Shown here: piece by piece, positions 10,901 through 56,000 of the stretch | Numbering within the stretch: the first letter of the stretch is position 1 | Layout of the letters: each line of letters begins with the position of its first letter | Origin: Botryllus schlosseri | Lineage: Eukaryota | Length of the DNA: 64,000 bases | Assembly: GCA_051294905.1 (NCBI GenBank) | Contig: CM119381.1 | Coordinates: 23,188,001-23,252,000 of the forward strand | Reading direction: 5' to 3' | Notes under the pieces: generated by a model | What the model saw: only the letters and a program-made list of their open reading frames with translations | Database searches by the model: none | Told to the model about the DNA's origin: nothing | Program-made: the position numbers and the translations under genes

Positions 10901-13900
10901 ATTCATATGGTACCACCTAAAAATGGTACATTGAACGCTCTCTCATTCGAAATTTCATGCTGGTGACGTCATATTTTGTGATACGATTGTTGAAATACAA
11001 TGTTCTTTCCAATTCTCTACTAGTTGCTGACGATTACCCCTGACGAGTGTCAGCCGAAAATATTTGGGTTCATTTCAATATGAATATACTATTTAATTAA
11101 ATAAGTAAATACTTCGATTGCTGTTTTTTTTTTTAATTTCAATTTTAAAATCCGAGAAAATACTAGCACTCATGAGTAAGTAAACCTAAACCGGTTTTGA
11201 ATTTTGGAAAGAGGCGAATCAACTCAAGCACTCCAATTTTATTCAAAGGGCCTAAAAAGTGCATCTTAGCACCAGTGTTACAAATACGGTATAACATAAT
11301 TTACAAGACATTCACGCACCTTGTGCATATTCGGATCGTTCACAGATACCATTGCCATCGCACGTTCCAAGATCACAGATGTAAAAATTGTTTTCATTGT
11401 CGCAGCTCACTGTTTCTAAGACTGCACTAATCAGTCTCTTACCTGGTTCCATCATCTGAAATGTGATCGTAGATTCATGAAAACGCAGCAAACTAACTGG
11501 TGCTAACCAATATACTATATTCTTACCAGCACAAGAACAACACAAGAGTCTTGATTCGAACTTGGGTGATTAGTAGCCCATTGTACCCATGGTGGAATTA
11601 CCAAGAATTCGCGAAGTCTGCCACACCATATCTTCATGCTTTTAACGTAAGTGCCAATGGGCTTCGCGTAGGATTCCATTTTCAGCGCCCAAGTCTAAAA
11701 ATCGAGACGTGTCGTGAACAAATGTTTGAGTAAATTATCTGATAAGTGTTTCTACAAAGGGTGACCTATATTGACTTGATTTGAAGGCAGAAGAGAATTT
11801 CATGATATCACAGTCATATTCACCATTATGAATGGCATTTTGTGTAGTTAGTTACAGGGAAAATTACCTGCTTAGGGTCTTCTCCTTACAAGCCAGGAAC
11901 TAATAGCTAGTTGCTTTGAATTTCAACAAATTCCTACCAATACTTCGAAATTTGGTGAGTGGACAACAGGTAATGGTCGGGTGTACACTGTACATCTCTT
12001 TTATTGGAAAAATTGTCAGAACAGCGACGCAGCGAAGCCTGTTTATCATAATCTGGGAAACCAAACCTTTATAAAATCAAACGCCTCTTTGGATGTAATC
12101 GCACTAAAAATATCCTCTCCCGTTATCCTGCTCGTACAACTTCTCTCAGCTGCGTGAAAGTCCTTCATTGTCGTGTGCAGACAAAGATGAGAATCCCCAG
12201 TACGAAGAAGATGACCCCGATAACACCGAACTGTCACAAAATTGTTGAAATAAAATCTATTAATTTCCCAGCACAAACATGCATGACTAAAGCGTAGTAG
12301 TATTATTGGTTTGGAAATAGTTTTTAAAATAATAACTTATAACACCTCACCTGGTTTTCGATAAACCAAGGAATAACCAAGCCCTCCGCAACGTGTTGAA
12401 TGGTCTCCCGCACATGGGACCGCACAATAGTCATCAAAGTTTGATAACACTGCAATAGGTTGTGCATCTACCAAGCCACAGTAACAATACCCAATACTTT
12501 TCATTATGGCATCTTCGTATCCCAATGAAAAACATTTTTCAGTGCATTCCCAAGGCAGCAAAGGCGAGTGGTGAATGAGGGAACCGTCAGAAAACACATT
12601 ATCCCGAAAACAACCAGCGATAAGGGAACCTTGGAAAATAAGGTGCGAATAACGGGTGCTGTCAAGGGAATAAGAGCACTGCAACACCTGGAATTTTCCG
12701 ACGAATGCTCGTCTGATCGAGACCTTTCGTGTATCTTTTCATATTGTGTAAAAGCTCTGAGGACAAAAATGCACAAGAAATGCATAATATCATATGGTAA
12801 AACGGAGCTGATGTATACTATACCCAATAGGTAATCGGCCCAGATGAATGGTGTGGAAGTAATCTCATTACTCTAAACAGAAACAATGACGTAAATCAGA
12901 GAATAGCAATATATATATATCATGGATTCTTACCTTCTCCAGAGAATAAAGCTTACAATTGCCTGTATCAAACGTGTAGACCCTGTAATGAGAAAATGCG
13001 GGTGAGTTTGTGATTTCAAAATCTTCATTTTTTTGAAATAAGCTTGGTTTCATGTAGGCTACCTGCAAGTATCAGTTCTTTTCCTTTTGATGCATTCCCA
13101 AGCGCATAGGTCGGCGTTATCAACTTGGAGAGACTCGAAATGAGTGTACTTCTCATTATTCATGCTCATTTGCAAGAATCTTTAACATATAAATAGTATA
13201 TGGCTAAACACACTTGAATGTCTTATTCATTTGTCACTAAAGGCTCAGCATGGCCGTCTATTTAATGAATTATTATACCTTGAATTCCCAAGCTGACATT
13301 CAAAGGGGTTCATTTTGCTACCATGGATTACATTCCATATTTCCATGTATAATAAATTACTGTGAGATGTTAGGGGTGACCAATCTTTTTGCTATTCAAG
13401 GCCACATTTAGATTACTAATGTAGCCTATGGCCGCATTCCGGGGCATAGCCGTAATGAACTAACTTGATGCCAGGTACCGATGTCAAACTGCCCATGTCC
13501 ATTTCCGTTGAACTCCGGACTAATACACTTTTCCATATAGACTCACTATATGTATCGAAATAGCGGGTGGTCATGTCATGAATAGTAACTGGGAGTCGTC
13601 CCGAGGTATTTTTTTTCAGATGCACGAATGAATTGCGTCATTATTATTAGTAGTTTCATATATTACTATCAAATATTTATCCTTTCTCAGCACATGTGAT
13701 CAGATTCTCCGGTAGAGTTGATGTCGGGAGTGTTTACGGAAATTTAGGGCAAGTTCAATTCAAGTTATAAATGATGATACATCTTCGGGTGGGTCAATTG
13801 TTGGTAGTCACTTCGTTGCATGCTGATGACCTTGACCTCCCACCAGGATTGTCGGTATAGTGGAAGGATATTGGAAACGCCCAATCGAACCAGAAACAAA

Positions 13901-22900: not shown

Positions 22901-25900
22901 CGGTATCAGTTTTATTAATATTTTCATCATTTCAAAACTCCTAATTCTTATGCTGTGGAAACTTTATCCCTCCTGGGATGTAGCGGCACGAACCCACCTA
23001 TCTGACCTATGATATACTTGATTAGTGTAGTTCAATATAATGCAGTTATTTGAAGAGCTTCTTGGAGGAACAGAACTTCAATATACAATTGAATAGTATA
23101 TTTACATTGAAATGAATCCGAATATTTTCGACTGACACTCGTCAGGGGTAGTCGTCAGCAACTAGCAACACGTGAAGACGTGCTTCCCGCATTTTAACAA
23201 AGTCATGTAGTTTACGAATATAAGTGCCCCTGAGATCGCGGCCACGTAGCAAGAACATCAACGCGTTTGCACAAACGCATAAATCAGCATGTCCCTTGAT
23301 TTATTGGAACACACACTTCACGCTGAGTGATAAGCTCACAATTGACTCATCCCCTCAAGTTGGATGCGGAGCAAACTAAGGCCATAAATTCTGCCATTGG
23401 CAAGCATCTGTTGGATAATCCCGCTTGTGCGAAAAATTATCGAGACAACAGATTTCGCGTCGTCGGAAGGGGCCGTTAACACTTTCATTTGTGCGCCTTT
23501 GAGTTGATTTTTATCAAAACACACCAGCCAAGGCTGTGTCAACAAATAGCACATTAAACGCTCTCTTCTTCGATATTTCATGCTGGTGACGTCATATTTT
23601 GTGATATGATTGTTGATATACAATGTTCTTTCCAATTCTCTACTATTGCTGACGATTACCCCAGACGAGTGTCAGTCGAAAAGATTTGGGTTCACTTCAA
23701 TATGAATATACTATTCAATGAAGTCATTTGTAAAGCCCAAGTGAGACCAATATAGAGTGATAAAATAGAATGGGAATCATAATAACAAATCCATATTAAT
23801 ATAATTATGCAATAATGCAGTTAATAATTATTGTAATCATCAGGCTACAAAATGAAAAGAGACACATTTACCCTCGGTGTCTGTATCAGTCTGGTTGATT
23901 GTGGAATCTGAACAAAGCAATAAGGAATAAGCAAACAATTCCACGTTAAATCTATTTTTACCTCTGGTCCAGCTTCCAACAAGCTCAAATCGCAAAACTA
24001 CATAATTGTGATAGGTCCAGGGATAAATTCGGATATATTTTGTGAATAAGGATATAGGGAAGTAGTGCACGATCTTTGTCAGTGCGTTTGTGTTGCCGTC
24101 AAAGATCTGTGACAATAAGTTAAACAGTTAAGCATTGTAATGTGATCTCTTATCTCCTATGAATTATATTACCAAATCCGCTCCACTATCATCTTCCAAA
24201 AATTTCCATGTATCACAGCAATCTGAATATGCTATTTTGAAGGACTTGACATAATAATCACCGTCTTTTGCTCCTTGCGTAATAATTCCCCGTATTATCA
24301 TATCGTAATTAACTTCCACCTGAAGCCACATTTCGCCGCCAGATTCTTCAAAGCCTTTCAAATCATAAAATTTGTCATTTAACTTGAAACTAGAAGCGAG
24401 GTTTCAGATTCAAGGAAAGGTATACCTAATATCCTAAGTTTATTTGCAATAATAGTCATAGTATTGAAGCTTTCCAGGTCATGCATTTCAAATTGAAACA
24501 GAAACGAATTTCGAAACAACTGCAGGGTTTCATCCGCTAAGAACCTTCATCTAGAACAGTGGTGCCCAACGTGGACGATATCGCTCCCCAGGGGGCGATT
24601 TGGCGGTCTAGGGGGGCGAAAATGGCGAAGGGGGGCGAAAATGGACAAAAGGGGCGACGGGGGGCGAAAATAGCGAAGGGGGCGATAGGGGGGCGATGAC
24701 GCGTTAAAACGGCTATGTTGGAGTCAAGTCGGAGATATGATCTTTCTTTTTATTTTATTTTAGTCATCCCACGAAAATTCAGTTGCAAAAGTGTAAAATT
24801 CGACTTGGAACGGGAAAGTTGACCGTTTTTTATTTTTATTTTTTGGTCAACCCGCCGGTGATTGCTGTTTGTATACCGGTTTGTCGGTTCACAAAATTTG
24901 GGGGGCGATGATCGGCGTTGAGCTTGAAAAGGGGGCGATGAGTCGAAAAAGGTTGGGGAACCACTAGAAATTTCACCATGGTTGAGCGGCACAGGAATGA
25001 CTCAAGTCAAATTCATTATTCAAAACGCCCGAGTCATTTGATTAAGGTATCCAATCTGTACTGCACTGATTGAACAGATTGCGTTGCCTTTGAAATCCAG
25101 ATAAAACAAACCACCAGTTCACTGCTGATATGAAAAAAATATTAATGAGGCTGAAGTTACATGCGAATGCCACAATCTGCTACAAATCAAGAAGGCATGA
25201 AATAACAGGCAACTCAGGTTAACGAATAAGATTTGGTCCAAAAGATCATACACACTGCAGTGCGGTAGGCCCAACCAATATCATAAATTTGAAACGATAT
25301 TGATATCGCCAATGCAACATATTCTGGCCGATAATGCCGCCATTTATGGGGGTAATGACATAATTGATGTATTTCAACAAGAACTCCTAATTCGGGCCAT
25401 AATTTGAAAAATATACCCTGCACAAACTTAATTTATCTACAATCTAAATCCAGCTGAGTAAGGAACTAGTACTAGTACAGTTTACAGGCATTTTCCCCAA
25501 GAAGTGAATCATGGCGATCATGAATCAATCATGGAGTACTGAAGATCCGCTCACTTGGTACGATTGTAGGAGTGATGACGTTGTTGGATTGACTAATAAA
25601 TATTGAGTTGGCCGACACCTACTTTTCCATTGCGATCATTATCACCTAGTCGGGCTCTATATGGGATTGGTCGGTGATGATATATCACGAAAATCCATTA
25701 ATCATCAAATCATATACTGCTGTGCAAAATATAATAGTAGCATTGTCATTCATGTAACTCACAACGACAAGCCCATCCTTTGTTTTTGCTCGCATCAATG
25801 CCCTCACCAAGCCTTCCGTACTTTGATGCAAATTTGTCGTTGAAGATTGAAGATGACTTCAGTCGATTATCCACGATTCTACCATCCTGCATCCCTAATG

Positions 25901-46938: not shown

Positions 46939-47163
46939 GCTATCTTTCATGGTATCGCAGTATTGTGGTGCATTGAAATGATAAATTGTTAGCAATAATT
47001 GGATTGAATTGAAATAAAACATTTTTAAGTCTTTCAATCACATATGAACCTCAAACTCATTTTCCATACACCCATGTGTCTTTTGTTTGTGAAATATCAT
47101 GAGCAAAATATGTCACATATGATTTTCGAACCACAGGAATTTACAGCTGTGAAAACTGCAAAG

Positions 47164-50100
47164 TGCAGACCGGATATGGCGTCTGATAACCTGCTAGAGT
47201 TGCAACCTGAGTCCCACGTAATGGGTGGCTGGGTAGATATACTTAGCTCAGGGTAGTAGGCGCACGTTCCTGCGTTAGTCCTGGATCTGACAACTTCAAC
47301 GTGAATGCAACGACAGTATTGCCTCAGATAGATATATTGGTCGAATAGGTATGGAATATACAGTAGGATATCGCGTATGAGTCTAGTTTGTAATTGAATG
47401 CACGAGCTAATAAATGGTAAGTCGCGTGGTAGCGAGAAGAAAGATATAAGTCACGTGATATACAGATATGAGAGAGAAGGGGACAAATCCCCACATCACC
47501 CCTTCCAAGGAGGCGTGATTAGCGACAATACAAAATGACATTTACTACATGAAGTGAATAGCAGTACGATTACGAAACATAGTCATTGGAACATAAACAA
47601 ATAGCGTGTGGTTGAAGGTGGTAAGGCCTAAGTATGCAGGGAATAAAGTATTGGTGGAAAGGCGATAACGTTAATTTAAAATGCGATATTGTAGCCTGAT
47701 GTTGCAATATTTATACAACATGATAGGAATGAAACCATATATGAGATAGTGTATCGAAAACACGTTAAGGGTTAGATTAAATATAGTCAAAATGGCGAAT
47801 TGGTCATCTGAGGCAATTTTTGTGTTTTATTAAAAGAACGAAAGAAGAAAATAAAATATGTACACAAAGGAATTGACATTAGGTCTCGCGAATGCGTCAT
47901 ACGCTAGAACGAGTTGGTGGTAGCTCGAAAATGAGTGTATGTTATTTGTAAAGGCAAAATCCTAGAAGCGGAATCCAGTGTATGGTTGGGAGCATATTAA
48001 AGTCAAAACTACTTTTCAAATTAATTGAAACACGTGGTATTAGAAGATAGGAAGTAACGGGAGTAGGAAACTGATGTCTGGGTTTTCTAGCGACCAGAGA
48101 CTGCTTTTATGAGTCAATGGAGGTGAAAGGAGAAAATTATTGAAAAGGTGGTCTGGTAGTCGAACCGCTTAAAATGGCGAGATTTGTGGGAAATTTCCCA
48201 AACCATTAAGATTAACGACCATTGAAATAGTCACAAAGGCCGGGGCCCGAAATTATGCGAGCCGTATATATTTTCGGCAAGAACAGTCGTATTGACGCAT
48301 TCGCTAATGGGTAGCCTATACGAATGAATTTTTAAATGCTAATAAGTCCGCATGGGAGAGATAGATAAAAGAACATGAATCATAGCCGCGTCTATAGGGA
48401 TTACGAAATTCGCCGCGTTTGAAAAGTGAACAGTCCATCAGTCTTTCGGAAGACCGAATAATTATTTATATACAGTTAAGCCATGCACCGTGGGCCGCGA
48501 ACCTGCCTGGAAGAATTAACAGTCAATGCTCATTGCTCAATAATGATTGTATTTAGATCCAGTTAGTTTGCTCCGCCAAGGTTAAAACGCGTATATCGCC
48601 TGTTCTGCGAATATTCTTCACGACTATCGAAGTCGACTTACAAATGCGTATAAATACGTGGTGTTACCAAAGTAATGTTGAACTGGTATGTCCCGAAATA
48701 TTGACATATGTGGCGGAATCGGAGAGCGGAGGAATGTCGTATAGTAGAGAGCATTTCGGCAGTTCACGAGTCCCGTTGGCAGACGACAACGAATTCTAGA
48801 ATGCAATGCAATATCGGCAGCAAAAAGGCTATTTAACAAAGTAGGAAAATAATAATAGCAAATAAAAGTAGCCTAATGACAAATTGAAAAAGAAGGTAAA
48901 TACAATAAACACATTGTAGGTCAGCGAACCGGATATGAAGTGGTGAAAATCTGCACCGATAGGGATGAAATGAGCCGAGTAGGACTACGCTATAATGTAA
49001 GCGTAAGTGCTAAGTATTGAATCGATTCCATATGTGACGGAGTGACGCAAGGCGTTTATATAAGCCTTGTGGTGAGTAATTTGAGCTTTCAAGTAGAAAT
49101 TAATAAAAAATTACGTAATCTCGAAGTGAATGGAAATTATGCCGGGTTAGCCTGGTGTATTAATTGGCTCAAAAGTATATAGAAATGGAATATTCGCATC
49201 AAAGCATGTCAAGATGAATGTAATCGTAGCGTAACGCGGGGAATTCGTCATTTAATTATATGACAAAGTAAGTCGTGAAAGTATAGTGTAAAAATTATAA
49301 AGAGAATGTAATTACAATAGCCGAAGTCATGACAAATGTGTGTATTGTTAGGTATAGCCTAATGGCATGTACGAATTTAGTGCTGCGAAAACGCAGTCAT
49401 GTCAAGAAAAGTCCCTAGCGATATGTACGCCGAACGGTATACCACAAATCCAGACATATCGCTGGATCTGCGCGCCATATGCTATCCAGATATAAAAAGG
49501 TTTCCGGAAATAAATTGACGTGTGCCGTTAAAACACGTCGCGACAGTTAATGCACAATTGCGTAAGTAAGAATCGTGCCTCACATTAAAAGTATATATAT
49601 AATATACAGTGACTGTAACGCTTTTGTAAGTACGGACTTCCTAGGTAGATCGAAGAAATGACTCAGATTGCGGTGCGAACGTCAGCATCAGATTTCGTAA
49701 TATCGCGAGACTGAGCGCTGTAGACACACGAGTTTAATTACAACACTGACCCCGTCCAACCGCTTGATCAGGGCGGAAGTTCCGGGCCAGGGTATGCAAT
49801 CCCGTGGCCGACGCTTTGAGAAGACTCGGATACTCCCGGGTCGAAATCGTGCCTTGGATCGCAACACCACCGAAACCACTCTTGATTTCCTAGGTCGGAG
49901 TAGCATATATGAATGGGAAATGTCCGTGGCCAAAATATATCACGGGATGTTTAGATAATATTGCGTCCAAATGGCATTGCGGGTAAAATAAATGTATCGT
50001 TAATCGCATGTAACTAGGTTGTAAAATCTGAGTATGTTCAGATGACATTATCGCGGGTAAGTATGTAAAGACGCAATTTACGAAGAAAAATGACAATTTG

Positions 50101-51963
50101 TCACCGTGTTAAAGAGGCCTTATTTAAGTATGGGTAATTAGAAGTAAGTGATTATGTAAAAGGCCTAGTATAAAGAAAGTAAATAAGTCAATGTTTTTAA
50201 AAAAAATGGGAAATTTATTCCGTATCCACAAATTCCAGCGTAAGGCTGAGTTTTAAGTAATGCAAATATGTGATTAAAATGAAATAACCATTATGAGAAA
50301 TTGTAGCAAAGCGAGGCTATGCGAAGACGCGTAATTAGATAAGATGAATTGAAGTTAGAAAAATAAAGTTAATTATAAAATCCCAATTCCCAGTGCTACT
50401 GGTATATCTTAATAGTTCATAGCCGAGATCGAAATTGCCGGTTAAAAAGAGCTGATATTGCCGCAGAATTATCATATTAAATACGGTGGGATGTTATGTT
50501 AAAGTCGGCTGAAAAGCCGCGTCAATATTGTTATCGAATTCACATTGACGGTATGTAATTACGGTAGTTAAAAAAAGGGTAGCGCTTAAATACGCGCGGA
50601 ACTCAATGTCGCATGAATGACAGATGAAATCACAAAAAGTAATGTATGAATTAGGTTTAAAGAAATATTATAAAATTACAATAATGGGATTGGTAGTTAT
50701 GTTCCAAGGAAATGCCGTGAATTTAATGAAACGAACAAAAAAACAGATTGGTAAATAACGACGGTGGTGGGTAGTGACGTACGCGGTAATATGAATGTAG
50801 GAAAACCGCAAAATTTGTAATAAAATCGAAATGGAGTTGCAATTAAACAATTGTAAGCAAATGGTATGTTAAACGAGTTACACGGTAGGCTAGTCGTGAC
50901 AAAGTGAAGTTAACGCGAAACAATAAATTCATATTGTTAATTTATTCGCTAAAACCTTTTCGACTAACTCTCATCAGTAGCGAACGTTAGTGATGATGGG
51001 GTGAATCAAATTTGAAATGTAAGAAATAGTTTGTCTGTATGACGTAATGATAACAAAAACAAACAACTGGTAGACGGGCTAGATACGGTAGTAATGGTAC
51101 AAAATGAACGTTAACGAGTAATTAGTAGTTAGTGAGTAATGGATCGGTAGTAATTATTCGATTTCACGGGAGAGAGAAGCAATTATATCGGGCGGTCGAG
51201 AGTGTAATTCCCGACGAGGAATGGATGTGATAATTTCGTTAGAAAGCAAAACGCTAAGATTCAAATAATAGTTTTTAAGGCCGTAATATAAAAACGAAAC
51301 CAATGAACAATGTTCTGTCAGTGTCAGAGTATCACTCAAATCTGGTTCTCTGAATGTCATGGCGACGAATATTGGAACACAAACCACGAAAATAATTATA
51401 TAGAAAGCACGAATCGAGCAATAACGAGGAAATTTGCTGCTAGCCGATAAAGCCAAGTGAGATAAATCATTCTCACTGCAAAATGCATTCCCGAAATTCG
51501 AAGTCAAGTAAACGGGTTTACCGTGTAAGTCTGGAAAAGTCCTGGATGGCTCCATAGCAGTTGTAAGTCCAATTTTGTAGGAGGCGATTCGTCCTTCGTT
51601 GAAGCTGAAATCATCTCACGAGTTGGCACCATGCAGACCGGATATGGCGTCTGATAACCTGCTAGAGTTGCAACCTGAGTCCCACGTAATGGGTGGCTGG
51701 GTAGATATACTTAGCTCAGGGTAGTAGGCGCACGTTCCTGCGTTAGTCCTGGATCTGACAACTTCAACGTGAATGCAACGACAGTATTGCCTCAGATAGA
51801 TATATTGGTCGAATAGGTATGGAATATACAGTAGGATATCGCGTATGAGTCTAGTTTGTAATTGAATGCACGAGCTAATAAATGGTAAGTCGCGTGGTAG
51901 CGAGAAGAAAGATATAAGTCACGTGATATACAGATATGAGAGAGAAGGGGACAAATCCCCACA
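47164..51963 (-). mobile_element. Non-autonomous LTR retrotransposon (LARD-like), very recent insertion
   Basis: 332-bp LTRs at 47164-47495 and 51632-51963, identical by eye, with TG...CA ends; 4-bp TSD AAAG; minus-strand PBS TGGTGCCAACTCG (51631-51619) and PPT GGAAGGGGTGA (47506-47496); no gag/pol-length ORF in 4.1 kb. Confidence 0.95.
50945..50984 (-). ncRNA. Hammerhead ribozyme-like motif inside the LTR element
   Basis: TTCGCTA-CTGATGA-GAGTTAGTC-GAA-AAGGTT-T-TAGCGAA: 7-bp perfect stem I, full core, same spacing as the PLE hammerheads in this window. Confidence 0.6.
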
Positions 51964-53055
51964 AAAGGTACAACTGCCACACTTTGCATTCAAAATACAA
52001 GAGTGAACATATTTTTTGAATTATTTTGACTTGTTTGCAAAGTGAAATCCAAAGGTGATGCTATAAAGTAATCAGCGTTAGGCTTACTACTCAAGTAGAA
52101 GCACAAGCTGTACATTTCTACTCAAGTAAAAGTACCGTAGTGACTTCTAAAGCACGTCAAAACTAGATCAAGTGGATTAAAAAAATGAAAGATGTCAAAA
52201 GTATTCAAGAAGCAAGATTTGGTCGATGGTTTGCAAACTTTTGGCAGTTAATCATTGACTTCTTTCACAATTGCAAGATGCCACTGACGCAAAATGACTA
52301 ATAACCCTATAGGTTCAAACTATGACTGCTATTTTATGCATTTCTTACAATTTCACTCATAAAGTGATCCAAACTTGGTGCATAACTACTTTCAACTTTT
52401 AAAAATAAGAAGTGTATCATATATCAGCATATCATGAAGGACAAAAATTTAGATTATAAACAAATCTTAGTTTTACAGGACATCGTTCTTCAAGGACAAA
52501 TCTTAGAAATACGGACGGTATGGTAACCCAGCCTATAGGTCAAGCTCTGCCAAAACGCTCATGTTGGTGCTGAGGTGTGATAATTAATTAGTTTCATTGT
52601 GATTAGTTACAATTGTCCAATGTAGACGGTTAATGAGCGAATCACAATATTAGCAATTAGCACATAAAGAGGACCTATATCCAATGCAAAGTTGCAAAGG
52701 CCGTTTTGGTTTTAGCCAATCTATGTAAATATAAGCCGCTGTTTCGTTAGATTAAAAACGCAAGAAAGGATACATACCTGCGATTGCCGAATAAATATAA
52801 TAGAATTTTTCAAGTACATGTACAAAGAACCAATTTAGCTGAGAATTTGCGTTAACTCCAGGGGGGATGAATGTCACGCGTCTGTTTATCATGAAAAGTT
52901 GGCCTCCATAACAGCTTGATTTATGTGTGATGTGAGCGATAAGTCAAAGGTCATATGTCGCAGCGGTTGTTTTGATTCCATCCTAAATGATTCCATTCTG
53001 TACTTCGCATTTGTTCTGGTGGCGTATTGTAAGCCTTGTATAACCCCTTTAGGAC

Positions 53056-56000
53056 ATGTTTCGCAGAAACCGTGGAAAGAGGGCAGTAGTTAACATTCCG
53101 AAACGGAAATGGAAGACCGGAAATCCGCATCAAAAGGATTGGGACGTATGATCGATGCTTATTGTTGATTTAATTTAATTTCTTAATGCCTATATGAGAT
53201 GACCACCGTCAAAAGTCTTAAAGTCGGAATGCCGATATAAGCGATTTCTAATGGATGAATACTACCGTGCTTATTTGAATGCTGCCACCGTTAGCCAACA
53301 TAATATAGCTGAAATTCGTGGCCTATACATGATAGCCTACATTTGATTTTTGAAAATATTTCACCGGATCAAATCAACTTATTATTCTTTAAATTAGAAA
53401 AAATAGGAGATCTGTGTTTAAGGTAACAGCTTGTTCGGTAATACAATTCACTTGAAGCCAGAATTGAATAATGTTCCACATAACCAATATTCATAAAATA
53501 TCATATTTGACACCAACTTGAAACTTTTACATTGTGACTGCTTACAGTTACAAACATTGTTGTCCGTCGTCCGGTAATATCAGCTTGTACAAGAGATCTT
53601 CACTTTTCCCTTTGGCATATACACAGCTGATTTTAAAACAACTATGCCTGAATCCTCTATTCAATTGCTGTTACAGTGGGGGATTTTTGGCACTTCTTCG
53701 GTATTCTCCACTCAGCGACCAGTGTTCCCCCATGACACCAACAAATGTTTCCCATGAACACGAACAAAAATTTATAAACGTCAAAATAAATTGTTGTTTT
53801 TTGTGTCTTTGTAGAGACGGATATTTGGGTGGGGGTTGGGAAAGGGGGATTGGATGTGGGTTAGGGCCAAGGTTGGGGGATATTAGGGTTAGGGGGGATA
53901 TTAGGGTTGGGGGAGGTGGGATATTAGGGTTAGGGGAGGTGGGATATTAGGGTTAGGGTTATGATTAGGGTTAGGTTAGGGGAGGTGGGATATTAGGGTT
54001 AGGGGTTAGGGCTTAGGGTTATGATTAGGGTTAGGTTAGGGGAGGTGGGATATTAGGGTTAGGTTAGGATTAGGGGAGGTGGGATATTAGGGTTATGATT
54101 AGGGTTAGGTTAGGATTAGGGGAGGTGGGATATTGGGGTTGAGGGTGATGTTAGGGGAGGCGGGATATAGGGTTGGAGAGAGGGGTGATATTAGGGTTGG
54201 AGAAGAGGGTTAGGGACATGATATTCAACCCTAACATCCCCCTTTTCCCCAACCCTAATATCACCCCCTCTCCCTAATATTACGCCTCCCCTAACATCTC
54301 CCTCAACCCTAATATCCCACCTCCCCTAACCCTAATCATAACCTAACCCTAACATCCCCCTCTCCCCCCAACCCTAATATCTCCCCTCTCCTCAACCCTA
54401 ACCCTAATATCCCACCTCCCCTAACACCCCCCTCTCCCTCAACCCTAATATCTCCCCTCCCACAACCCTAATATCCCCGTTCCCCTAACCCCAACTTTGA
54501 CCCTAACCCACCTCCAATCCCCCCTTCCCCAACCCTAATATACCCTCATTACACCCCTAATCTTGGGATACCCTAACCCACCTCCAATCTCCCTTTCCCG
54601 CAACCCAGTAGTACAAAGACACAAAACAACAATTTATTTTGACGTTTATAAATTTTTGTTCGTGTTCATGGGAAACATTTGTTGGTGTCATTGGGGAACA
54701 CTGGTCGCTGAGTGGAGAATACCGAAGAAGTACCGGATTTTTGACTACTGTGACCTTAAAATTATCCTCTGAATTACCATATGAATAATCAAATTCGTCC
54801 ATTTATAACAACAAATTCATTTCCCACAGAGCACCGTCAATGATCTGTCTGTTCATAGAGCCTCAGAAGAAGAAGTGGTAAGGAATTAAATTGTAGTGCG
54901 TCGCTGTTTCCATCAACAGTATATGTATTGCAGCAACGTCGTAGGCTCATTCACAAATCAAAAAATGCCAGTGCAGCCAGAAGAGCACTTGGTGAACGGG
55001 CGAGAAGAGTTTTCATGGACCCAGCCAGCCCTGCTCAGGTTGAAATGGAAATGAAAAAATTAGCAATTTTAAAAGAGGTGGGGTCTCATGCAATGAATTT
55101 ATCTGAATTCGGACTCATGCAGAAGAGGGTTGTTCAAAGAGAACTTTTTCCCCCAAATTTACCTGCAATTCAATGAAATATTAGGTTTGGGTTGACTAAA
55201 CGACGGCTCAATTCCTGCGTGTAGAAGCAAATTCATTAGAGAAATTAGAAAAAAAATTAATTTACTTAGAAGCGTAAGTTATTTGAATACAATATCTTGG
55301 ATTTGAAGCTATAGTAGCCAATATATTGTGGGGAAGTCATTAATTATTAATTATAGATTCACCCACTGTCAATACTATTATTTCCAATCCAACATTTTGA
55401 ACGTCGCAAACTTTGCTTCTATCCCAATTTTGCTATGCATTGTTTTTGTAGACAACAACAATTTCACAAGAATTTTTTTTTCATTTCAAATTTTCGAACT
55501 CCAATAGCTTTTCTTCTACAGGTTGGAATTGAACCAAATTTGGTATGCAGCGTTTTGATAGCCAACCTAACAATTTTATTGAATAGGCTGTCAAATTTAG
55601 AAGAGAGACATTATTTTTCAACAATCATAATGTAGAACCTGGTGTGATGACGGACCCTGTGATTTTTGATGCATTATCCAGGTTTTGTATGATCACGACG
55701 ATTTGAACGAAGTGCTAAAACGAGTGGACAACACCATGTATTCCGTTAAGACAATGTTTCACGGTGCGCCGTATCGCACTGCAGGTGACTTAGCCAGCTA
55801 TGCTCCTGGATATGGGATTGGCACTAATAATTACTTGCCTTGAAGGAAACGTCAATGTGACATCTGCGCCTGGTTCAAAGTGTTCAATCAAAGGACCGGT
55901 GCCTGTGCGGGATGAGCCCACGACTCAGATGAGTTTATTATCAGATTCCATTATGGACAAGCATGCTTTGAATGAAGAGGTAATAATAAATTTAAATTTT

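What the first reader, a model, noticed from the sequence alone, without database searches (positions are those of the whole stretch)
50930..51050. Penelope-type hammerhead ribozyme embedded in an LTR retrotransposon (retrozyme-like chimera)
About 650 nt downstream of the PBS, on the element's sense strand, lies UUCGCUA-CUGAUGA-GAGUUAGUC-GAA-AAGGUU-U-UAGCGAA. It has the same 7-9-3-6-1 spacing as the PLE hammerheads here, a similar loop II (GAGUUAGUC vs GUGUCAGUC), and loosely similar flanks (ACGTCATA upstream, CAATATGAAT downstream). Stem I has an entirely different sequence yet is perfectly paired and longer (7 bp). Established: plant retrozymes are non-autonomous LTR elements with hammerheads in their LTRs, and PLEs carry minimal hammerheads. 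An animal non-coding LTR element with an internal PLE-derived ribozyme is a combination I do not recognise. Caveats: helix III is not palindromic and the triplet is UUU, so it may be an inactive captured PLE fragment.
Basis: partly seen in the sequence, partly recalled or inferred. Interest (0 to 1): 0.8.

Follow-up and report, generated by a model that had tools for sequence, protein, structure and literature searches.

The report
Penelope hammerhead fragment nested in LTR element
The hammerhead ribozyme motif is real, but it belongs to a 210-base tail of a Penelope-like retrotransposon that once landed inside a non-coding LTR element and has been copied along with it five times, so it is an ordinary nested transposon insertion, not a new kind of ribozyme-bearing LTR element.

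Summary
The motif exists as described, on the minus strand (50985..50946). It is homologous to, not just similar to, the hammerhead of an active Penelope-like element (PLE). That PLE has a 2781-nt tandem unit and an 851-aa RT/GIY-YIG ORF. Its exact 40-nt ribozyme occurs 203 times in this 495-Mb genome.

The LTR element is also real: 47164-51963, with 332-nt identical LTRs, TSD CTTT, a PBS, a PPT and no coding capacity.

The ribozyme sits in a 219-nt insert (51127..50909) made of 7 filler nt, the 3'-terminal 210 nt of the PLE and a duplicated AC. The insert ends at a recurrent PLE 3' terminus. At least 25 sequenced family copies have the empty site, and only five copies carry the insert. It is therefore a 5'-truncated PLE insertion that hitch-hiked on a small, recombining LTR subfamily.

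All other copies have a palindromic helix III (AAGCUU), the feature that lets such minimal hammerheads act as dimers. The window's AAGGUU is a private change, unique in the genome, and it abolishes that pairing.

RNA reads over the fragment all come from the PLE. The LTR flanks are essentially silent, and no read ends pile up at the cleavage site.

There is one ribozyme per element and none in the LTRs, so this is not retrozyme architecture. Low interest.

The parts
50946..50985 (-). Minimal type-I hammerhead motif: stem I 50985-50979 / 50952-46, core CUGAUGA 50978-72, helix II GAGUUAGUC 50971-63, GAA 50962-60, helix III AAGGUU 50959-54, and U17 at 50953. The predicted cut is 50953|50952. The G at 50955 on the minus strand (C on +) is a private change from the family's C (AAGCUU).
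50911..51120 (-). The 3'-terminal 210 nt of a PLE. It runs from 43 nt after the PLE stop codon, through the inter-ORF spacer with the hammerhead, to 27 nt past the ORF's ATG. It is 94% identical to the active 2781-nt PLE family.
51121..51127 (-). 7-nt filler (TACTAAT) at the 5' junction of the PLE insertion.
50909..50910 (-). AC duplicated from the target (CACTAAC|TTCAC). It is a 2-nt TSD, or a 4-nt TAAC microhomology with the PLE end.
51632..51963 (-). 5' LTR of the host LTR element (332 nt, TG..CA), 100% identical to the 3' LTR.
47164..47495 (-). 3' LTR.
51614..51631 (-). Primer binding site TGGTGCCAACTCGTGAGA.
47496..47506 (-). Polypurine tract GGAAGGGGTGA.
51964..51967 (-). Target-site duplication CTTT. 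The other copy is at 47160-47163.
51154..51555 (-). 133-aa open frame of the LTR element. It has no Pfam match and dN/dS is about 1.3, so it is probably not a gene. The PLE fragment is inserted 27 nt after its stop.

Best explanation
A Penelope-like element made a severely 5'-truncated insertion, its last 210 nt, into a DNA copy of a non-coding LTR retrotransposon. The insertion is in sense orientation, 27 nt after the element's short open frame. The fragment spans the PLE inter-ORF spacer and so carries the PLE's minimal type-I hammerhead. The marked LTR copy stayed mobile, and the fragment has since been retrotransposed and recombined into at least five loci as a passenger. The ribozyme was tolerated because such minimal hammerheads have almost no helix III of their own. 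They need a second copy to build a 6-bp intermolecular helix III from the AAGCUU palindrome, and the LTR RNA has only one copy. In the window's copy a private C-to-G change (AAGGUU) destroys that palindrome, so this copy is most likely catalytically dead. Shown here: homology, the empty site, the junctions, copy numbers, the uniqueness of the mutation and the origin of the RNA reads. Inferred: target-primed insertion by the PLE machinery, tolerance through monomer inactivity, and inactivity of the window's copy.
For: The donor is a PLE: three 100% identical tandem units of 2781 nt, each with an 851-aa ORF. The ORF matches RVT_1 at 3.6e-10 and has a weak C-terminal GIY-YIG match. Its homologues share the RT-centred domain set, some with GIY-YIG. 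The hammerhead lies 13 nt upstream of the ORF's ATG in the 225-nt spacer. The fragment in the LTR element matches this spacer at 94% over 210 nt. Its 3' end (...CGCGTTA) coincides with one of two recurrent 3' termini of independent PLE copies. The second terminus lies 34 nt further and corresponds to the 30-40 bp 'tail' described for PLEs (PMC8557442). Empty site: 25 of 30 sequenced family loci read CACTAAC|TTCAC with nothing between, and five share the identical filled junctions. The five have different flanks beyond the LTR and are mosaics of family variants. Among the loci read, every copy except the window's has AAGCTT. Genome-wide there are 203 exact AAGCTT copies against 1 AAGGTT. The helix III duplex energy is -4.3 kcal/mol for AAGCUU against +2.6 for AAGGUU, and the homodimer gain is about -8.7 against -3.8 kcal/mol. 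PLE minimal hammerheads are inactive as single motifs and weakly active as dimers in vitro (PMC4209133). In the RNA reads, depth of 20-170 is confined to the fragment. All reads carry the PLE variants, including the palindromic base, and run on into PLE 3'UTR sequence. The LTR flanks are 0 in the bulk run.
Against: The TSD is only 2-4 nt and overlaps a microhomology, so target-primed insertion cannot be told with certainty from template switching onto PLE RNA during LTR reverse transcription. The 40-nt ribozyme is unchanged in four of five LTR copies, while the rest of the fragment differs from the donor by about 7%. That conservation is not significant (about 8% by chance), but it does not exclude constraint. 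Only about 6% of one bulk RNA run and 3% of one single-cell run were read, so weak expression of the chimera could have been missed. No cleavage assay was done. The private base could be an assembly error.
Confidence: 0.85

Rival explanations
1. The fragment was acquired not by PLE insertion into DNA but by template switching of the LTR element's reverse transcriptase onto a co-packaged PLE RNA and back. It is still a passenger.
For: The family recombines heavily, as the mosaic blocks show. PLE sense RNA is abundant. The junctions show short microhomologies (TAAC / ACT) and a 7-nt filler.
Against: The 3' end of the fragment coincides exactly with a recurrent 3' terminus of independent PLE insertions. 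That is expected for target-primed insertion and would be a coincidence for two random template jumps. An AC duplication is present.
Confidence: 0.1
2. The hammerhead is functional in the LTR element. In one version it cleaves the LTR transcript, in cis in dimeric genomic RNA or in trans with PLE RNA through the AAGCUU palindrome, giving a retrozyme-like processed RNA. In another version the palindrome serves as an RNA dimerisation site. On this reading the subfamily carrying it is favoured.
For: Four of five copies keep a perfect ribozyme with the palindrome. The fragment has been carried into several recombinant backgrounds. Orientation is sense. Abundant PLE RNA with the matching palindrome is present in cells.
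Against: There is one ribozyme per element and none in the LTRs, so unit-length excision and circularisation as in retrozymes is not possible. Only 5 of more than 45 family copies carry it. The youngest verified copy, with identical LTRs, has lost the palindrome. No reads cover the chimera's junctions in the raw RNA runs, and no read ends pile up at the cut site. PLE minimal hammerheads cleave poorly even as dimers (PMC4209133).
Confidence: 0.04
3. The motif is a chance match to the hammerhead consensus in AT-rich transposon DNA.
For: There is no Rfam hit. Core-only patterns occur by chance about 0.6 times per window.
Against: It shows 210-nt homology at 94% to a PLE spacer. There are 203 exact genomic copies and 0 in the reversed control. 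Stem I and helix II covary between PLE families while the spacing and the palindromic helix III are kept.
Confidence: 0.01

Closest known systems
Minimal type-I hammerheads of Penelope-like elements (Cervera & de la Pena 2014, PMC4209133)
   Same: It has the CUGANGA...GAA core, the G10.1-C11.1 pair, an open helix I, and a very short helix III with a palindromic sequence (AAGCUU in the family). It lies in the repeat or junction region of a tandemly arranged RT/GIY-YIG element. It has many copies per genome, and stems covary between families.
   Different: This copy is detached from its PLE. It sits as a 210-nt 3' remnant inside an LTR element and has lost the palindrome through one substitution.
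Plant LTR retrozymes (Cervera et al. 2016, PMC4918200)
   Same: Both are non-autonomous, non-coding LTR elements with PBS, PPT and a 4-bp TSD that contain a hammerhead in sense orientation.
   Different: Retrozymes carry type-III hammerheads inside both LTRs, so a 600-1000 nt RNA is excised and circularised. Here there is one type-I minimal motif in the interior. Most family members lack it, and no processed or circular RNA is seen.
Metazoan non-LTR retrozymes (Cervera & de la Pena 2020, PMC7229834; Li et al. 2026 preprint, 10.64898/2026.07.22.740005)
   Same: Both are short PLE-related sequences bearing a type-I hammerhead. They are thought to derive from PLE pLTRs.
   Different: Non-LTR retrozymes are 170-400 nt tandem repeats expressed as circRNAs. 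The fragment here is a single copy embedded in another transposon.
Ordinary nested or 5'-truncated retrotransposon insertions propagated by a host transposon subfamily
   Same: It has an empty site in most family members, identical junctions in all filled copies, a canonical donor 3' end, and 5' truncation with filler.
   Different: Nothing essential differs. The passenger simply happens to contain a ribozyme.

Membership tests
PLE minimal type-I hammerhead | Conserved core C3-U4-G5-A6-N7-G8-A9 ... G12-A13-A14, with H17 not G | tested here: met
   CUGAUGA ... GAA ... U17.
PLE minimal type-I hammerhead | Type-I topology: helix I open, formed by the 5' and 3' ends | tested here: met
   UUCGCUA/UAGCGAA gives 7 bp plus a G.U. 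Other families in this genome have UAUUCCC/GGGAAUA and ACCC/GGGU, which is covariation.
PLE minimal type-I hammerhead | G10.1-C11.1 pair closing helix II | tested here: met
   In GAGUUAGUC the pairs are G-C and A-U. The second pair is G-C in another family, GGGUCAGCC.
PLE minimal type-I hammerhead | Short helix III of palindromic sequence, allowing a dimeric active form | tested here: not met
   The window's copy has AAGGUU, which is not palindromic (duplex +2.6 kcal/mol). The family and the four other LTR copies have AAGCUU, so they meet it. The window's copy is therefore a mutated member by descent.
PLE minimal type-I hammerhead | Located in the repeat or junction (pLTR) of an RT + GIY-YIG element | tested here: met
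   The donor family meets this. The window's copy keeps only the 210-nt junction remnant.
PLE minimal type-I hammerhead | Self-cleavage | not testable with these tools
   There is no pile-up of read ends at the site in RNA reads, even for the PLE copies. This is weak evidence, because the libraries are not end-specific.
LTR retrozyme | Non-autonomous LTR element with PBS, PPT and a short TSD | tested here: met
LTR retrozyme | Hammerhead inside each LTR, so two per transcript | tested here: not met
   The core-plus-spacing pattern finds a single motif in the element, 646 nt inside it, and no hit in either LTR. The motif's position is shown.
LTR retrozyme | Ribozyme present throughout the family | tested here: not met
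   25 of 30 sequenced family loci lack the fragment.
LTR retrozyme | Expressed as excised linear or circular RNA | tested here: inconclusive
   No reads on the chimera's flanks or junctions in the raw RNA runs, but only 3-6% of each run was read.

The most novel reading that the evidence does not exclude
The four intact copies could be an incipient animal 'LTR retrozyme'. In this reading the PLE hammerhead, through its AAGCUU palindrome, pairs either with the second genomic RNA of the LTR element or with abundant PLE RNA. That pairing would process or dimerise the LTR transcript, coupling the fates of two unrelated retrotransposon classes.
Probability: 0.04. Interest if true: 0.7.

Novelty: new member of a known kind. 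Interest (0 to 1): 0.2.

Why it matters
Mainly as a caution: a well-formed ribozyme motif inside an unexpected host element can be a nested remnant, and here the empty-site test settles it. It has modest positive value. It shows that a sense-oriented minimal hammerhead can pass through several rounds of LTR retrotransposition, which fits the view that these motifs are inert as monomers. It also documents a very young, expressed PLE family with 203 identical ribozymes. In that family the ribozyme sits 13 nt upstream of the ORF start, and the copies show two discrete 3' termini. Such a family could serve studies of PLE RNA processing.

Tried and rejected
- **Rfam:** searches at gathering threshold and at E<=10 gave no hammerhead hit. 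This is uninformative for minimal motifs.
- **Coding capacity of the LTR element:** all ORFs of 50 aa or more lack Pfam matches. The 133-aa frame is open in 27 of 30 copies, but dN/dS is about 1.3. It was rejected as a gene.
- **tRNA scan:** I scanned the window to identify the tRNA matching the PBS and found no tRNA gene.
- **RNA evidence:** Read laying found no accumulation of ends at 50953|50952 and no joints. Contigs of X1 bridge both junctions, but that run may be DNA, so I did not count it as expression.
- **3' LTRs of the other four filled copies:** I wanted them to date those copies and check their TSDs.
- **Constraint on the ribozyme:** zero changes in 40 nt at about 6% divergence has a chance probability of about 0.08, so it was rejected as evidence.

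Full report
**Observation.** The minus strand of the window reads TTCGCTA-CTGATGA-GAGTTAGTC-GAA-AAGGTT-T-TAGCGAA at 50985..50946.
- This is the order of a type-I hammerhead: the helix I 5' strand, the CUGANGA core, a short helix II closed by G-C, GAA, a six-base helix III element, H17 = U, and the helix I 3' strand.
- The predicted cut lies between 50953 and 50952.
- Stem I is a perfect 7 bp, or 8 bp with a G.U.
- The window's other Penelope-type hammerheads, at 11040 (+) and 23145 (-), have the same 7-9-3-6-1 spacing.
- Rfam reports nothing, even at E<=10. From my own knowledge of the models, I expect that for minimal motifs without a real helix III.

**The host element.**
- Two 332-nt direct repeats, 47164-47495 and 51632-51963, are 100% identical.
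- Read on the minus strand, they start with TG and end with CA, and they are flanked by a CTTT duplication.
- They are followed by the PBS TGGTGCCAACTCGTGAGA and preceded by the PPT GGAAGGGGTGA.
- The 4.1-kb interior has no ORF above 133 aa and no Pfam match.
- The 133-aa frame is open in 27 of 30 family copies, but dN/dS is about 1.3. I treat the element as non-coding.

**Where the motif comes from.** I searched the genome (495 Mb, 219 contigs) with 351 nt around the motif.
- Five copies matched at 99-100% over the whole query.
- The first look found over 900 candidates. All the scored ones beyond those five matched at about 94% and covered only 210 nt (window 51120..50911).
- Those shorter matches are spaced 2781 nt apart or arranged head to head.
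- One such array (L032) has three 100% identical 2781-nt units. Each has an 851-aa ORF with an RVT_1 domain (3.6e-10) and a weak C-terminal GIY-YIG match.
- More than 1400 database homologues share the RT-centred domain set, some with GIY-YIG.
- A tandem or inverted arrangement, RT plus GIY-YIG, and a hammerhead in the junction together define an endonuclease-bearing Penelope-like element (PMC4209133, PMC8557442).
- In this PLE the hammerhead lies in the 225-nt spacer between successive ORFs, 13 nt upstream of the ATG.

**It is a nested insertion.** I searched with the LTR-internal sequences on either side of the 210 nt. Many family members have the two flanks adjacent to each other.
- In the 30 loci I could read, 25 have the empty site ...CCATTATTCACTAAC|TTCACTTTCGCACGA.
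- Five loci (the window, C14:24.90 Mb, C5:2.21 Mb, C8:27.67 Mb and C5:27.23 Mb) share the identical filled structure: CACTAAC + TACTAAT (filler) + 210 nt of PLE ending ...GTTTCGCGTTA + AC + TTCAC.
- The fragment's 3' end coincides with one of two recurrent 3' termini of independent PLE copies. The other terminus is 34 nt further, which matches the 30-40-bp 'tail' described for PLEs (PMC8557442).
- A 5' truncation with filler, a canonical 3' end and a short duplication are what a target-primed, 5'-truncated PLE insertion should look like.
- Acquisition by template switching during LTR reverse transcription is a weaker alternative.

**The insertion happened once and was then propagated.**
- The five filled copies lie at different loci with unrelated flanks.
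- They are mosaics. Blocks of 98-100% identity alternate with blocks of 85-90% identity that have different partners.
- This shows that the marked element went through several rounds of retrotransposition and recombination.
- A single insertion is what the five identical junctions indicate.

**State of the ribozyme.**
- Every other copy I read has helix III = AAGCTT, a palindrome. This includes the PLE copies and the four other LTR copies.
- Genome-wide the exact 40-mer with AAGCTT occurs 203 times. The AAGGTT form occurs once, in the window. The reversed control occurs zero times.
- A palindromic helix III is the feature that lets minimal hammerheads form an active dimer. Single motifs are inactive, and dimers cleave weakly in vitro (PMC4209133).
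- The intermolecular AAGCUU duplex is -4.3 kcal/mol, against +2.6 for AAGGUU.
- The predicted gain on homodimerisation is about -8.7 kcal/mol for the family form against -3.8 for the window's form.
- As a monomer, the catalytic fold (-5.2) is less stable than the MFE fold (-8.8).
- Across PLE families in this genome, stem I (UUCGCUA/UAGCGAA, UAUUCCC/GGGAAUA, ACCC/GGGU) and the second pair of helix II covary, while the spacing and the palindrome are kept.
- The class is therefore a real structured RNA. The window's copy is a mutated, probably dead member.

**RNA.** I laid one bulk and one single-cell raw RNA run, plus two contig sets, on 50400-51650 at 90% likeness.
- Depth of 20-170 is confined to the fragment. 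The LTR-internal bins on both sides are 0 in the bulk run and near 0 in the single-cell run.
- All reads across 50955 carry the palindromic base: 15/15, 15/15, 44/44 and 9/9.
- They also carry the PLE-specific variants, and they run off at 51120 into PLE 3'UTR sequence. They therefore come from the PLE, in sense orientation.
- No accumulation of read ends was reported at the cut site, and no joints were found.
- The PLE is expressed. The chimera is not detectably expressed in what was sampled (3-6% of each run).

**Comparison with known systems.**
- The motif is a member, by descent, of the PLE minimal hammerheads.
- The element is not a retrozyme in the defined sense. Plant LTR retrozymes have type-III hammerheads in both LTRs and are excised as circRNAs (PMC4918200, PMC7229834). 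Here a single type-I motif lies in the interior, most family members lack it, and no processed RNA is seen.
- It is also not a metazoan non-LTR retrozyme, which is a short tandem repeat (PMC7229834; 10.64898/2026.07.22.740005).
- The best description is an ordinary nested transposon remnant that happens to contain a ribozyme.

**Residual novel reading.** The intact copies could cleave or dimerise through the palindrome, in cis in dimeric genomic RNA or in trans with PLE RNA. I put this at about 4%.

**Limits.**
- There is no biochemical test.
- The private base could be an assembly error.

Noticed in passing
L032:1-10000 (G000:C10:6495001-6505000); also G000:C10:6485943-6502719: A very young, expressed PLE family with 2781-nt units that are 100% identical in tandem and an intact 851-aa ORF. 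The hammerhead lies 13 nt upstream of the ATG. There are 203 exact ribozyme copies genome-wide, many in head-to-head pairs.
   Followed up: partly
L006-L032 (PLE 3' ends): Independent PLE copies end at two discrete positions, ...GTTTCGCGTTA and 34 nt further at ...CACTTGTT. This matches the 30-40 bp 'tail' reported for PLEs.
   Followed up: partly
window 49700-51963 compared with L044, L047, L049 and L057: LTR-family copies are mosaics, with near-identical 100-nt blocks alternating with blocks of 85-90% identity that have changing partners. This indicates frequent recombination between family variants.
   Followed up: partly
G000:C16:22.45-22.53 Mb and G000:C12:20.40-20.49 Mb: The same non-coding LTR family forms tandem arrays with a period of about 4334 nt (LTR-interior-LTR-interior). 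All units that could be read (L035, L038-L041, L045, L046, L048, L053-L055, L059, L060, L062) lack the PLE fragment.
   Followed up: no
window 51154-51555 (-): The 133-aa frame just after the PBS is open in 27 of 30 family copies, yet dN/dS is about 1.3 and there is no Pfam match. It is probably kept open by the C/T-rich strand composition.
   Followed up: yes
window 50965-50978 (-): The core bases CUGAU can pair with GUUAG of helix II to form an alternative hairpin. The same is true of CUGAC/GUCAG in the other PLE hammerheads at 11040 and 23145. The two differences between the families keep the pairing as wobble pairs.
   Followed up: no
window 53689-54734: Head-to-head arrays of TTAGGG-variant telomere-like repeats are bounded by 116-nt inverted arms that are 97% complementary.
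   Followed up: no
window 23654-23700 (+) and 23100-23160 (-): Two decayed PLE hammerhead copies lie in inverted orientation about 500 nt apart. One has a CAGACGA core and the other a broken stem I.
   Followed up: no
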